Origin: Laetmonice hystrix
Lineage: Eukaryota
Assembly (NCBI GenBank): GCA_965235115.1
Contig: OZ249445.1
Location: 14,012,001-14,076,000 of the forward strand
Length of the DNA stretch: 64,000 bases
Direction: 5' to 3'
In this document: piece after piece, positions 16 to 6,000 of the stretch
Layout of the letters: every line of letters begins with the position of its first letter
Position numbering within the stretch: position 1 is the stretch's first letter
Program-made: the position numbers and the translations under genes
The notes under the pieces: model-generated
Told to the model about the DNA's origin: nothing
Database searches by the model: none
What the model saw: the letters and a program-made list of their open reading frames with translations, nothing else

Positions 16-3000
16 CTACAACACAACAATAACTTTATGATATCTTTCTACATCTGGTGCTCATAACCACTATAAACACCTCTACAATCAACACGACACT
101 GATGGTTTTTTGGTGGATATTATATTTCTATGGAGATCAGATTGAATTTCTGAATTGTACTGCGATATTTACATACTGGGGTAGCAAAATTTCTGCATAC
201 CATTCGCTTTACCTGTGTGAATATGGGCAACATAAACAGTACTGCATTTCATTATGATGATTTTTAACAAAGCAGTTTCAAAGATAGAACCTTGTGTGTA
301 AAGTAAGAGACGTATACATAAATCTTCTACCAACCTTCTTGGGGTAGATGTTGAAGATTTTGGCAGCGTTGGTGCTGGTTACAGCAACAAAACGGCTTGC
401 ATCCATCTTTCCAGTGACCTGGTGTAAAAATGGGCCAAAATCAACACCTTGCATTTTGCCCCACCTCGCATAGGTACCACAACATTACCAAGAAACTTAG
501 ATATTATTTATGAGAAAAAATGTAAACTTAGTTAAGTTATGAGGGTTGTCACTTGATAAGAACAGACTCTTTAATTCAGCCTTCCTAAAATGTTATCGAT
601 CTTTGTGTCCGATTTTAAAACCATGACAGTCTGCTTACCACTCCTTTCTCCCAGATGATTGACATGCGATCCTCGAGTCCATTGATACCGTTTGGAATCA
701 GACGGAAGTCATCTTTACCAAGTCCCTTCTGGTCAGCGTTGAAGGTACAGTTGTCTGTTCCAGTCAACTGGAGGTCACCACTGAAACATTCACCCGACAA
801 GTCAGACTGACACATACATCATGTCACATCAGAGTGACACATATGTCATGTAACATCAGTGACACATACGTCATGTAACATCAAAGTGACACATACGTCA
901 TGTAACATCAGAGTGACACATACGTCATATAACATCAGTGACACATACGTCATGTAACATCAGAGTGACACATACGTCATGTAACATTAGAGTGACACAT
1001 ACGTCATGTAACATCAGTGACACATACGTCATGTAACATTAGAGTGACACATATTTCATGTAACATCAGTGACACATACGTCATTTAACATCAGTGACAC
1101 ATACGTCATGTAACATTAGAGTGACACATACGTCATGTAACATCAGTGACACATACGTCATGTAACATCAGTGACACATACGTCATGTCACATGACGTGA
1201 CACACACGTCATGGACTCTACAACATGGCACTAACTTGCTTCATATCATATCAGTAATGTCAGATTTTAATTTTTAAAGAATGTTTGGGATTGCTATACA
1301 ATACGTAGTATAACTTGGATATTTTTAAGACTGAACCTACTTGGCGAGTAGATTCATGAGGTAGTCAGGTGTGCTGGGATCGGGTCGCAGTGGTGGGCTG
1401 AGGACGTGGCCCGCCGCATGACGCCAACATTTGTTCCAGTAGTGGGTGCCGTCTGTACCAAGGCTGGCAGCAATCGGCTCACCAAACACTACCTTACCTA
1501 CAATCCAGCAAACCTCACTTACACACAATATCTCATCGTACGACAGTATAGGAACTTCAAGGCAATGCTTGTCCTTCACAAGGTAAACTGCCGTGCACTA
1601 AAAGTGTTGAGAGGTATTCACTTTACACTTGTAGTGAACAGAAGAATAGTAAAAAAAAGAGGTTCCTGTCAATTTAGTTGGTGTAATGATATTTATTGTC
1701 TGGGCCACTAAAACCGTATATTATAGAGTGCTTTAGGTACAAGTCATCAATTCCTGACTCAAGATCGTCACCTTTTAAACTCAACGCCTTGCAAACTAGT
1801 ACTGCTTATTCTAGGACCATAGATTTGTTCACAGTGTTTCTAGGACTTAACACTGATTAGAAAAAAATCCTCTTAAACACTGAAGTAGTAGAAAATGTGT
1901 CAATATGGAACCATGTTGACTAATTCCTGCGAGTTTTCTTGCAAGGAAAATGTTAATGTGCTGAAAAATCTCAGTGATCTCAAATAAGTTACTATGACCG
2001 TAAAATTCTAATTACAATAAGTCATAATCAACACGAACAATGAGAACATTAACTTTAGTCTCACGTTCCTTTATTTCCCTCTACATTGATGACAAATTCA
2101 CTAAAAGGAGCTTTATCAATGCCCCCTCAGACTAGGAAAACCCGTGTCCTTGTCCTTCAATTGATTATAGTTTGTAAACGAGTACATAAAGCCATTCTCC
2201 CGAAGTCTACATGCTGGGTGACGACAGTTTACAGGTGACATATATTGTTAGACAGTCACGGGGTACTGGTACATGCAGGGGACACTAGATTTACATGTAT
2301 ATGGATTGGGAATAGACATGCTGGACATAAATATAGATTACTGACCCCCGCCCCCGCTCCCCAACATATCCCCACAACTCCACAACAAAATGCCTTCCTT
2401 CTCCCCCTCCCCCCATAAACTGAGGCCCACAACAATGAATACTGACAGGAAGAAAAGGTGCAGTCCTATACCAGGACTGACCTTGGACACCTAGGTGCAA
2501 AGTATAGACTATGGTAACATGGACACCAACTTCAGGGTTCGTCAACATTCTTTTGTCAAACCTTCTGATCAATTTTCATGATGACCAGTTGTAAGATGTC
2601 GAGATTTAAATTCTCTAAAGAAATATAAAAAATAAACACCGCCATTGCAAAAAGGTCGGCACAAGTAAGGGGAAAATAATTTTCAACAATCTCGAATTAT
2701 AACTGACTTTCAATGCTAGACGAACCCTGGTTTCTTCAAAACACAACAGAAAACACAGCGCCAACCAAACTGGAGAATCCCGTCCTAACTATGGGTGCCA
2801 TCGTTGCCTTACCTTCCCGGCGCATTGCTGCAATCACATCGGCTGAGCTTTTGCTCATGACTCGAGTTATGTAGACTGGACTATTGGCCTGACTGGCGAG
2901 AGAAATCGCCCTAAAACAGGCCTCAGCCTCACTCTGGAACACAACAGGGGATCAGTCCTCATCAGTGACAGTGCTTGCACTGAGGCTTTGAAAGGCCTTC

Positions 3001-6000
3001 GAGGCCCGAGAGGTGAGTGCACAGTCAGTGCTTGCTTGGATCCAACGACCACCGTGACTGGGAAGGTCCATTCCCCATGCGGTTAGTAACAACACACAGG
3101 ACTATCTCTACATGACGTCCTGTTTGGCCAGTCCCTTTTCCAGCAATAGCTGATAATTTTTTAAACAAAATGTATGATTTATTTTACCATAAAGTTTTTT
3201 TTCTTTCTTTAGAATGCTGAATGCAGTATGTCTTTATTCAAAAACTTTTCCAATATCAAGAATATCTGGAATGTCTTGCTGATATGATGACAGCATGGAT
3301 ACTGTGATGTGTGAACTTGGCCAAACAGAAGTCATTTGTGCTTGGGCTAAAACCAAAGCCATATAAGATTAACACCATTGCTGGCTGTTTCCGATGTGTG
3401 CATAGTTTGCCGCATTCACTACTTACCCTGGCTGCGAGCTTTGGTGATCTCATCTGCTGAGGATTTGCTCATGACGTGTACAACATAGAGTGGGGAGTTG
3501 GCCTGACTGGCCAGTGTGATGGCGCGTTTCACTGCCTCAGTCTCCACCTGTGGGGCCACCAGCAGCAAGACACCAAAAGCAACCATAGAAAAAAAAGGCA
3601 GTGCAGATAGAAACATGAAAAGAAACACATAGACAACACAGACACGTGTGAATTTAATGAGGTATATGTGAAACAAAAGCAAAAGAAAGTGTGACATCTA
3701 GCCATAAATAATGCTACAGTACAAAGAAAATGGTGCAACATCTAGACAGATGGATATTAAGCAAAGTCACAGTTGTTTGACATTGATTGTATATCATCAT
3801 TCTACATTCGAAGAACAGTAGGAAACTTTACATCAAATCTAGTCTCTCCTATACTGATCACAAATATCTCAGATCTCCTATAATTCCTCTATGCAGAATA
3901 ATGTTTGTTTTGTTTAACCTTAACAAGAAACAATTATTTTCACAAGTACCACCTGGCAATATATGCCACATACGTCATCTACAAGTGCTTCATCATTCCT
4001 TCATATTAACTGCCGAGTTAAATGAATTAACTTTGATACTGGTTAGTTTTGAGATTAAAACTCCCTTCAGTGGCCAGTCGCTGTAACCTCACCTCTTCTG
4101 GTCGACTCATCTCATGGCCCTCTGGACCAGTGATTCCCATGGCGATCAGTTCTTTAGATTTCTGTAACAGCAACAACCACAAACAAATCATGCTCCTGCT
4201 TTCTCGTCAAAAATACATACTCAAACTCAACTGATTCTCCTCGCAAGGAAAACTGATATGAAAATAAAAACATAATGTTATCTTCTAAATATTCCCAGAT
4301 ATTTTACTTATTCATAGTTTGCAAATACACAAATACAAGGAGTGAAACTCCAGGAAATTGACTGTGTCGTTTAGATACAGACCTCGTCAATAAGGCTGCC
4401 GTTTTCTGCATGCACCATGGGCAGGGCACCTGCAGCCTTACAACTCTTGAACATACGGTAGAGCTCTGTGTCATTGAGCATGTACCTGTCCTTGTATGCC
4501 ATGAATGCCTTGAACGAGTTCACTCCTACAATCAATAAACAAATGTTTTACTCTTACTTCCCAACATAAATATGGCAACATAAATATGGAATATGAAATG
4601 GGTCAATCGGAGCTTCTTTTACAACTGACAATGGGTCATGAGAAAACGAACACATTTTCTATTTCATACAATTTGTTGTAATTTTTCTATTCCATTTATA
4701 TTCTCACTGGTAGAATAATATCTCTACCTTTCTCCTTGGCAAGCACGTCGATCTCCTCGGCCACCTTGTCACTCCACCACGTCACTCCCACGTGTAGACC
4801 ATAGTCACAACAAACCTTGGCGTCTGCCCACCCTCGCCATGTCTCATACGCTTCCAATAGCGATTCTCCCTTATTGGGCAGTGCAAAGTCCACTGGAACG
4901 ACCAATTCAACAGTTTTTTATCTACCTCTTTAACATCACTTACACCATATTCTGACAGTAGACTTGGAAGGGAACTACCTGGGCCCGGTTCATAAACAAA
5001 GTCAAGTCAGTTTTAATTAACTTGAAATCCCTTTTAACCAATCAGATTCAAGTAAAATTGACTTCAAGTCAATTAAAATTGACTTGACTTTGTTTGTGAA
5101 CTGGGCTGGGCTTACCCCAGCATCTTGGGTTTACTCTTCATTATATTATACTTATTTCCCACCAGGTGGCAGCTCATGTCCACTAATTCAGTTCTTCACA
5201 TGGTACCTGCTAAAAGTTCTCAAATTTGATAAATAAAATAAGAGTTGGATCAGGGAAATTCTAGGGAATGTATCCACAAGCATCTTATACATGTATGTAC
5301 TCAGCCGACATCTGTTTGAGTGAGTGAGTGAACTGAGTGAGGAATAGAGTGGGTATACTGACTGATCATGGTGGTGCCGCCAGCGAGTGCCGCCTTGGTG
5401 CCATGGTAGAAGTCGTCTACGGTACACGTCCCCATGAACGGTAGCTGGAGGTGGGTGTGGGTGTCGATACCGCCTACAGACACACATAAAACATCAACCT
5501 AACACACCTCTAACCATATACCATCTTCTCACGACCCCTTCAAAACCAAGGTCACTGCCATTACTTCGAAAACGCTTTCAGCTGTTTGAGAAAGAAAGGT
5601 AAAAACCCCACAAAAGCCCCCAAAGGTATGCAATCTTTACATATTGAAAATATGATGCCGATTTCATTCTACCCAAAGTAAGTCCTTTGAAATATGAGCA
5701 TTCTCAAAATCTATTTTCACAAAATTTAATTTTTCTTTATATCTAAAACTCATGTCAAAAACTTCCCATTTCTCTGTCTGCCCATCTTCTGAGCCTGTGG
5801 GCCTCAAACCCCCACCTCAAACACCCTCACACTTGGGACCAAGTCCCACCTTAAACACCCTCACACTTGGGTCCAAGTCCCACCTCAAACACCCTCACAC
5901 TTGGGTCCAAGTCCCACCTCAAACACCCTCACACTTGGGTCCAAGTCCCACCTTAAACACCCTCACACCTGGGTCCAAGCCCCACCTCAAACACCCTCAC

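What the first reader, a model, noticed from the sequence alone, without database searches (positions are those of the whole stretch)
2813..3547. Duplicated mutually exclusive exons switch one gene between a metabolic enzyme and a CRMP-like pseudoenzyme
Seen: two paralogous exons of exactly 121 nt, both phase 0/1, both with intact splice sites and open frames, 493 nt apart. Using both or neither shifts the frame, so only one-of-two gives protein. Exon A has [10 protein letters not shown], exon B has [10 protein letters not shown]. Established: this His is a zinc ligand of dihydropyrimidinase, all other ligands (DTHTH, NSFK, VHAENG, GTDNC) are in shared exons here, and vertebrate CRMP1-4 read YITKVMSK with a basic residue at this site. 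A comparable exon pair is reported for Drosophila CRMP (exons 9a/9b), so the principle is not new. Inference: this lineage does by splicing what vertebrates do with DPYS plus separate CRMP genes. The codon-level divergence of the two exons suggests an old duplication, possibly ancestral to bilaterians.
Basis: partly seen in the sequence, partly recalled or inferred. Interest (0 to 1): 0.85.

Follow-up and report, generated by a model that had tools for sequence, protein, structure and literature searches.

The report
Alternative zinc-ligand exons in DHP/CRMP gene
The only dihydropyrimidinase/CRMP gene of this annelid-like genome has two old, interchangeable 121-base versions of the exon that holds one zinc-binding histidine (His or Arg), a splicing switch of a kind known from the fly gene and already annotated in other invertebrates, but apparently evolved separately from the fly's.

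Summary
On the minus strand, exon A (3547-3427, [10 protein letters not shown]) and exon B (2933-2813, [10 protein letters not shown]) are each 121 nt, AG/GT-flanked and 493 nt apart. Using both or neither gives an immediate stop.

The gene is the genome's only DHP/CRMP gene. The other metal-ligand motifs lie in shared exons.

One spliced contig from a run of the same sample joins 4093|3547 and 3427|1497, so the exon A form is expressed. Exon B was not seen in that run.

Exon B is nevertheless old and constrained. Synonymous sites between A and B are saturated. The same His-then-Lys/Arg pair of 121-nt exons stands in Paralvinella and Capitella. RefSeq lists His/Lys isoform pairs of one gene in bivalves, octopus, chiton, Lingula, Ptychodera and Acanthaster.

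The evolutionary reading changes. Insects and decapods (hence probably fly 9a/9b) alternate a different, roughly 78-residue exon unit. Nematostella and both amphioxus paralogues keep an intron inside the 121-nt unit. This makes separate duplications more likely than one bilaterian-ancestral pair.

This is a new member of a known kind. Moderate interest.

The parts
3427..3547 (-). Exon A (121 nt): His version, [13 protein letters not shown]-type.
   Evidence: The spliced contig of run X4 joins it to 4093 and 1497. Best solved-structure matches are dihydropyrimidinases.
2813..2933 (-). Exon B (121 nt): Arg version, [14 protein letters not shown]-type.
   Evidence: Best solved-structure matches are CRMP1, CRMP3 and CRMP2. 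Counterparts exist in Paralvinella and Capitella. No depth in X4.
4093..4161 (-). Constitutive exon before the pair (69 nt, ends in phase 0, ...[12 protein letters not shown]).
1341..1497 (-). Constitutive exon after the pair (157 nt, [11 protein letters not shown]...NLLA).
   Evidence: Only one match in the whole genome.
4383..4525 (-). Constitutive exon with NSFK (the carboxylated-Lys motif) and VHAENG (a His ligand).
4728..4892 (-). Constitutive exon (165 nt).
5363..5473 (-). Constitutive exon with GGIDTHTH (the HxH ligands).
9028..9101 (-). Second coding exon of the short form.
11537..11652 (-). First coding exon of the short form (ATG at 11652).
639..780 (-). Constitutive exon with GTDNC (the Asp ligand).
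335..418 (-). Constitutive exon ([19 protein letters not shown]...).
1..15 (-). Start of the next exon. It runs off the window, and the remaining three C-terminal exons lie in L004 (G000:C11:14002001-14012000).
62205..62360 (-). Candidate distal alternative first exon. It encodes the N-terminal extension of the 'long' isoforms (approximate bounds).
   Evidence: tblastn with the N-termini of the Lingula and oyster long isoforms. Lead from scan note s1-344633.

Best explanation
This is a mutually exclusive exon pair in the single DHP/CRMP gene of a lophotrochozoan (annelid-type) genome. Each transcript takes exon A or exon B. Because each exon is 121 nt, taking both or neither shifts the frame into an early stop, so only one-of-two mRNAs encode protein.

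The exon A isoform carries all six metal-ligand positions of dihydropyrimidinase and is the pyrimidine-catabolic enzyme. The exon B isoform replaces the His that binds the second (beta) zinc with Arg, and changes 14 more residues of the same strand-and-helix segment. It therefore most likely lacks or has much reduced hydrolase activity and serves a CRMP-like, non-catalytic role.

The pair is old: it is shared by annelids, and probably by molluscs and brachiopods too. It is a separate duplication from the insect/crustacean (fly 9a/9b-type) pair.

Shown: the anatomy, the frame logic, single-copy status, expression of the exon A form, and conservation of exon B.

Inferred: use of exon B in this species, loss of catalysis, and the CRMP-like role.
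For: - Anatomy and frame logic.
- Single gene and only two exon copies in G000.
- Spliced X4 contig with GT-AG joints 4093|3547 and 3427|1497.
- Exon A scores best against DHP (42 bits, against 30-38 for CRMP1-4). Exon B scores best against CRMP1-4 (37-41 bits, against 32 for DHP).
- Both exons, each 121 nt with AG/GT and in His-then-Lys order, stand in Paralvinella and in Capitella, where the Lys exon is unannotated.
- Window B and the Paralvinella Lys exon share 29 of 40 residues while synonymous sites are fully saturated (dN 0.21).
- His/Lys isoform pairs of one gene, differing only in these 41 residues, occur in Dreissena, Mya, Ruditapes, Mercenaria, Sinanodonta, Octopus, Liolophura and Lingula.
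- Lys-type full-length proteins come from 2-3 kb contigs that must be transcripts.
- No sequence variants fall in either exon in three DNA runs, while the introns carry about 40.
- The gene groups with annelids inside Lophotrochozoa.
Against: - Exon B has zero depth in the only RNA-like run. These are contigs of one sample of unknown tissue, and contigs drop minor isoforms, so this is not evidence of absence.
- Five of the six ligand positions remain in the exon B isoform, unlike vertebrate CRMP1-4, so residual or altered activity is possible.
- No assay, no tissue data and no CRMP-specific partner or phosphosite was tested.
- Horseshoe-crab paralogues show that His to Lys/Asn at this site can arise by point change alone. 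The CRMP-like look of exon B may therefore be convergent rather than inherited.
Confidence: 0.75

Rival explanations
1. Exon B is an unused or decaying duplicate in this species. The gene makes only the exon A enzyme.
For: No contig of the RNA-like run X4 touches 2813-2933, while six neighbouring exons are joined in one contig.
Against: The exon has an intact 121-nt frame, a polypyrimidine/AG acceptor and a GTAAG donor. No variants fall in it in three DNA runs. It shares 29 of 40 residues with the Paralvinella Lys exon at saturated synonymous sites. The Lys form is the annotated product in Paralvinella and a RefSeq isoform in many lophotrochozoans. A dead exon would not stay open over that time.
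Confidence: 0.08
2. Both isoforms are active amidohydrolases. Exon B tunes metal content, substrate range or regulation rather than making a pseudoenzyme.
For: HxH, the Lys of NSFK, the His of VHAENG and the Asp of GTDNC are all in shared exons. Only one ligand changes, whereas vertebrate CRMPs seen here have also lost other ligand positions (sequences).
Against: The changed residue is the conserved His of every DHP, hydantoinase and allantoinase that exon A matched. The same site is Lys/Arg in CRMP1-4, which are known, by general knowledge, to lack DHP activity. In flies the non-His exon form is reported as the non-enzymatic CRMP (Morris et al. 2012, as cited in PMC7954323).
Confidence: 0.15
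3. One reading: one exon duplication in the bilaterian ancestor gave the pair. Flies, lophotrochozoans and ambulacrarians inherited it, and vertebrate DPYS and CRMP genes each kept one copy.
For: - The same 121-nt unit, phases and His-then-Lys order occur in annelids and in the starfish Acanthaster.
- In the peptide tree, window B groups with the Paralvinella Lys exon and, weakly (80/71), with vertebrate and amphioxus CRMP exons.
- Holding all Lys/Arg exons in one clade costs only 1.4 lnL (p-AU 0.47).
- Nematostella has no second copy.
Against: - Insects and decapods alternate a unit running from residue 16 of this exon to the end of the next exon. That unit cannot be derived from a 121-nt pair by simple steps.
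- The phase-0 intron at residue 15|16 is shared by Nematostella, amphioxus DHP and amphioxus CRMP-like, and by inference by insects. It must therefore have survived into both the protostome and the deuterostome stems, after which uninterrupted 121-nt pairs can only have arisen separately.
- Both amphioxus paralogues carry that intron, as expected from duplication of a whole gene rather than sorting of an exon pair.
- Horseshoe-crab paralogues show convergent His to Lys/Asn.
- The AU test equally fails to reject window A+B as sisters.
Confidence: 0.25

Closest known systems
Drosophila melanogaster CRMP gene, paralogous exons 9a/9b (Morris, Dubnau, Park and Rawls 2012, Genetics 191:1227; seen here only through PMC7954323, bioRxiv 10.1101/292813 and PMC3650022)
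   Same: One gene makes the DHP enzyme and a CRMP protein by either/or use of two paralogous exons. The switch removes a zinc-binding His (reported as His to Gly in the fly; His to Ala in bee isoforms).
   Different: In insects and decapods the alternative unit is about 78 residues, running from residue 16 of this exon to the end of the next exon. Here it is 40 residues plus one base, bounded by other introns, and the replacement is Arg. The two are most likely independent duplications. I could not obtain the fly sequence or the 2012 paper itself.
RefSeq isoform pairs of 'dihydropyrimidinase(-like)' in Lingula, Dreissena, Mya, Mercenaria, Ruditapes, Octopus, Liolophura, Ptychodera and Acanthaster
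   Same: The same 41-residue segment is swapped, His against Lys, in otherwise identical products of one gene. The same 121-nt exons in His-then-Lys order were verified on DNA for Acanthaster, Paralvinella and Capitella.
   Different: These are automatic annotations. I found no paper describing them in four full-text searches that bore on it. Here the basic residue is Arg, as in amphioxus CRMP-like. The ambulacrarian pairs may be a separate duplication.
Vertebrate DPYS plus CRMP1-4 (DPYSL) paralogues
   Same: The same division of labour. Exon A resembles DPYS and exon B resembles CRMP1-4 at this segment, including YIT[K/R]VMSKS.
   Different: In vertebrates these are separate genes, and the CRMPs have lost several ligand positions and diverged along their whole length. 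Here only 15 of about 575 residues differ between the two forms.
Other enzyme switches by mutually exclusive exons, such as PKM1/PKM2 (reviewed in PMC7954323)
   Same: Tandem homologous exons of equal length change a functional site while keeping the fold.
   Different: PKM switches regulation of an active enzyme. Here the switch removes a catalytic metal ligand.

Membership tests
DHP/CRMP family (cyclic amidohydrolases, Pfam PF01979/PF07969) | Full-length similarity to dihydropyrimidinases. | tested here: met
   tblastn with the Paralvinella protein, which carries PF01979/PF07969, covers residues 5-575 in 14 collinear exons at 57-88% identity over the core. The gene groups with annelid genes in the tree.
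DHP/CRMP family (cyclic amidohydrolases, Pfam PF01979/PF07969) | Six metal-ligand positions: HxH, carboxylated Lys, His, His, Asp. | tested here: met
   DTHTH, NSFK, VHAENG, YVVH (exon A) and GTDNC are all present in the exon A isoform. The exon B isoform has five of the six.
Mutually exclusive exon pair | Tandem homologous exons of the same length and phase with their own splice sites. | tested here: met
Mutually exclusive exon pair | Using both or neither is non-productive. | tested here: met
   Both variants give premature stops.
Mutually exclusive exon pair | Transcripts exist with either exon, and not with both. | tested here: inconclusive
   The exon A form is found in X4, while exon B is not covered. 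In related phyla both forms are annotated or assembled from RNA.
Same duplication as Drosophila/insect CRMP 9a/9b | Identical exon unit (the same flanking introns). | tested here: not met
   Insect and decapod isoforms and read-through models alternate residues 16 to about 94. This rests on protein-level evidence only. No arthropod DNA was obtained, because the Gryllus gene was too long.
Same duplication as Drosophila/insect CRMP 9a/9b | Covers the same His ligand. | tested here: met
   Bee, cricket and decapod alternative exons differ at the YVVH position, reading H/A, H/R and H/K.
Vertebrate-type CRMP (non-enzymatic) | A basic residue in place of the second-zinc His. | tested here: met
   Arg in exon B, Lys in CRMP1-4.
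Vertebrate-type CRMP (non-enzymatic) | Loss of hydrolase activity, tubulin/semaphorin-pathway function, and a regulated C-terminal tail. | not testable with these tools
   Needs enzyme assays, zinc analysis and genetics. The C-terminal tail is shared by both isoforms.

The most novel reading that the evidence does not exclude
The exon holding the second-zinc His of the DHP/CRMP gene has been tandemly duplicated into an either/or pair at least three separate times: as a 121-nt unit in Lophotrochozoa, as a 121-nt unit in Ambulacraria, and as a roughly 235-nt unit in Pancrustacea. Chordates, a copepod and horseshoe crabs reached the same His-versus-Lys/Arg/other split by duplicating the whole gene. 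That would be an unusually clean case of repeated, convergent splitting of one enzyme into an enzyme and a pseudoenzyme. The resemblance of the annelid exon B to vertebrate CRMP (YIT[K/R]VMSKS) would then be convergent.
Probability: 0.55. Interest if true: 0.75.

Novelty: new member of a known kind. Interest (0 to 1): 0.55.

Why it matters
The pair shows how an animal with one DHP/CRMP gene can make both a pyrimidine-catabolic enzyme and a likely neuronal, CRMP-like protein that differ in only 15 residues. That gives a minimal natural pair for asking which residues turn the enzyme into a CRMP.

The comparison across phyla makes a long-standing question directly testable: did alternative splicing precede gene duplication in this family, or did each lineage find the solution on its own? 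The intron positions found here favour repeated independent origins. If confirmed, this is of general interest for the evolution of pseudoenzymes and of mutually exclusive splicing.

Tried and rejected
- **First run search.** A search with the whole 2.8-kb stretch found only DNA-like runs. A second search with one exon brought in X4, which proved to be spliced.
- **Papers.** Morris et al. 2012 and Rawls 2006 are not held. The supplements of PMC7954323 give no exon sequences. One literature search was wasted on chemistry hits. No paper on this exon pair outside Drosophila turned up; that is a limit of the library, not proof of absence.
- **Fly sequence.** No Drosophila sequence reached the lists, so other insects were used instead. 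The published 'residue 192 His to Gly' could not be mapped onto this alignment.
- **Exon peptide tree.** With 40 columns it is largely unresolved. AU tests reject neither 'all Lys/Arg exons form one clade' nor 'window A and B are sisters'.
- **Full-length tree.** It places the gene among annelids but leaves the deep nodes and the DPYS/CRMP relation unresolved.
- **Locus look-ups.** They failed for Owenia, Acanthaster X1 and Ptychodera X1. Gryllus gave no DNA.
- **Contig L006.** This metagenome contig, which I first took for an insect, has yet another intron position (residue 8|9) and is of unknown origin. I did not use it.
- **Possible RNA pairing.** An 18-nt, 83% complementary match between exon A and the intron before exon B is within what chance gives. 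I did not pursue it as a splice-selection structure.
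Full report
**1.

The gene lies on the minus strand.
- Exon A is 3547-3427 and exon B is 2933-2813. Each is 121 nt, preceded by AG and followed by GTAAG, and 493 nt separate them.
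- The upstream exon ends at 4093 in phase 0, and the downstream exon begins at 1497.
- A and B share 74 of 121 bases and 25 of 40 residues. Third codon positions agree at only 19 of 40, and the flanking introns are unrelated.
- A splice model built from the window and the adjoining 10 kb gives an open frame with either exon. With both, a stop appears two codons into B. With neither, a stop appears three codons into the next exon.
- Exon A reads [10 protein letters not shown] and exon B reads [10 protein letters not shown].
- DTHTH, NSFK, VHAENG and GTDNC are in constitutive exons.

**2. What the gene is**

A tblastn with an annelid dihydropyrimidinase lays 14 collinear exons over the window and the flank.
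- In the genome (627 Mb, 35 contigs) the constitutive neighbour exon has one match, and the alternative exon has exactly two, namely A and B. This is therefore the only DHP/CRMP gene.
- In a tree built without the alternative segment, the gene groups with Paralvinella and Capitella (support 97) inside a lophotrochozoan clade (support 98).
- Against solved structures, exon A scores best with fish dihydropyrimidinase (42 bits), above CRMP1-4 (30-38 bits). Exon B scores best with CRMP1-4 (37-41 bits), above DHP (32 bits).
- The His of exon A aligns with the conserved His of DHP, hydantoinases and allantoinase. From general knowledge of these enzymes it is the His that, with the carboxylated Lys, holds the second zinc (His248 of human DHP).

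**3. Expression**

The first run search found only genome-sized runs. A search with one exon added X4, with 59 million letters, from the same sample.
- Laid on 1300-5600, X4 gives one 2,111-nt contig that skips five introns with GT-AG ends. It joins 5363|4892, 4728|4525, 4383|4161, 4093|3547 and 3427|1497.
- The exon A mRNA therefore exists as predicted.
- Exon B has no depth in X4. These are contigs of one sample of unknown tissue, and contigs drop minor forms, so this does not show absence.
- The three DNA runs carry about 40 differences in the introns of this stretch and none in either exon.

**4. Exon B is old and kept**

- Synonymous sites between A and B are saturated (pS 0.66, dS about 1.6), while dN is 0.40.
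- The Paralvinella locus has a His exon (unannotated) 645 nt upstream of the annotated Lys exon. The Capitella locus has the annotated His exon and, 295 nt downstream, an unannotated open Lys exon. All four are 121 nt with AG/GT.
- Window B and the Paralvinella Lys exon share 29 of 40 residues with synonymous sites completely saturated, which indicates purifying selection.
- Products of one gene that differ only in this 41-residue segment, His against Lys, are listed for Dreissena, Mya, Ruditapes, Mercenaria, Sinanodonta, Octopus, Liolophura and Lingula.
- Two mis-joined models, from Mya and Mytilus, contain both exons in His-then-Lys order.
- Several Lys-type full-length proteins come from contigs of 2-3 kb, which must be transcripts.

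**5. How it most likely works**

Frame arithmetic enforces one-of-two: double inclusion or double skipping yields an early stop and, presumably, decay. No short-intron hindrance applies, since the intron is 493 nt. I found no convincing competing RNA pairing.
- The exon A form is the enzyme.
- The exon B form keeps five ligand positions but replaces the second-zinc His with Arg and alters 14 further residues.
- I infer a form that is catalytically dead or weak, acting like CRMP. This rests on analogy with CRMP1-4 and with the fly gene (as cited). It remains untested.

**6. Comparison with what is known, and the evolutionary reading**

The principle is published for Drosophila (Morris et al. 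2012; I saw only citations).

Insect and decapod isoforms alternate a different unit. Honeybee, cricket, shrimp and mantis-shrimp forms are identical up to residue 16 of this exon. They then differ through the end of what is here the next exon, about 78 residues. Read-through models show that the second copy starts at VNCPLY....

I then mapped introns on DNA, numbering residues 1-41 of the 121-nt exon.

| Taxon | Intron before residue 1 | Intron at 15\|16 | Intron in codon 41 |
|---|---|---|---|
| Annelids, Acanthaster, Priapulus | present | absent | present |
| Nematostella | absent | present (phase 0) | absent |
| Amphioxus DHP | absent | present | present |
| Amphioxus CRMP-like (YITR) | present | present | absent |

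The arthropod unit starts at that same 15|16 position. From this I draw three inferences.
- The 15|16 intron is ancestral and survived into both the protostome and the deuterostome stems.
- Uninterrupted 121-nt pairs can only have arisen after its loss, so they arose separately in Lophotrochozoa and in Ambulacraria (Acanthaster has His then Lys, 457 nt apart). The arthropod pair is a third event.
- Chordates split the roles by duplicating the whole gene, since both amphioxus paralogues keep the 15|16 intron.

Further observations fit this picture:
- A copepod model fuses two tandem genes, one CRMP-like and one DHP.
- Horseshoe crab has three near-identical paralogues with His, Lys or Asn at the site. 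Change at this residue is therefore recurrent.
- Nematostella and Priapulus show no second copy.

The caveats are these:
- The arthropod boundaries rest on protein models only.
- Parallel intron gain cannot be excluded.
- The peptide tree and AU tests decide nothing. It costs 1.4 lnL to unite all Lys/Arg exons and 4.0 lnL to make window A and B sisters, both with p about 0.47.

I put independent origins at about 0.55-0.6.

**7. Verdict**

The functional reading is well supported by anatomy and conservation, but use of exon B in this species and loss of activity are not shown.

It is also probably neither the fly's pair nor a bilaterian heirloom.

The feature is a further member of a known kind. 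It is already visible as automatic isoform annotation in related phyla, though not in any paper I could find. The scan has noted many other mutually exclusive exon pairs in this same genome.

Noticed in passing
window 62205-62360, minus strand: An open stretch matches the N-terminal extension of the 'long' DHP/CRMP isoforms of Lingula and oyster (...[13 protein letters not shown]...). It is probably a distal alternative first exon, so the gene spans nearly the whole window. The scan already noted it as s1-344633.
   Followed up: partly
window 4900-5190 (intron): Word depth in the three DNA runs jumps from about 50 to between 26,000 and 150,000, with many loose ends. This points to a very high-copy repeat element inside the intron.
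   Followed up: no
window 850-1240 and 12370-13180, minus strand: Tandemly repeated units show up as long repeated open frames, in the intron after exon 1497-1341 and upstream of the first coding exon.
   Followed up: no
window 2979-2996 and 3524-3541: An 18-nt, 83% complementary pair links the 5' part of exon A and the intron 46-63 nt before exon B. It is within chance expectation and was not tested as a splice-selection structure.
   Followed up: no
L008:3501-3621 (Capitella teleta) and L007:5644-5764 (Paralvinella palmiformis): These are unannotated second copies of the exon: a Lys-type exon in Capitella and a His-type exon in Paralvinella. Each is 121 nt with AG/GT. The public models of both species miss one isoform.
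   Followed up: yes
P0151 (Tigriopus californicus model): One predicted protein fuses two tandem genes: a divergent CRMP-like copy (YVGPVMS, with altered ligand motifs) followed by a canonical DHP.
   Followed up: partly
P0378, P0382, P0429 (Tachypleus tridentatus): Three paralogous genes on different chromosomes are nearly identical in this segment but carry His, Lys or Asn at the zinc-ligand site.
   Followed up: partly
L013:20827-20871 (Branchiostoma belcheri CRMP-like gene): The first 15 residues of the segment form a 45-nt micro-exon between two phase-0 introns.
   Followed up: yes
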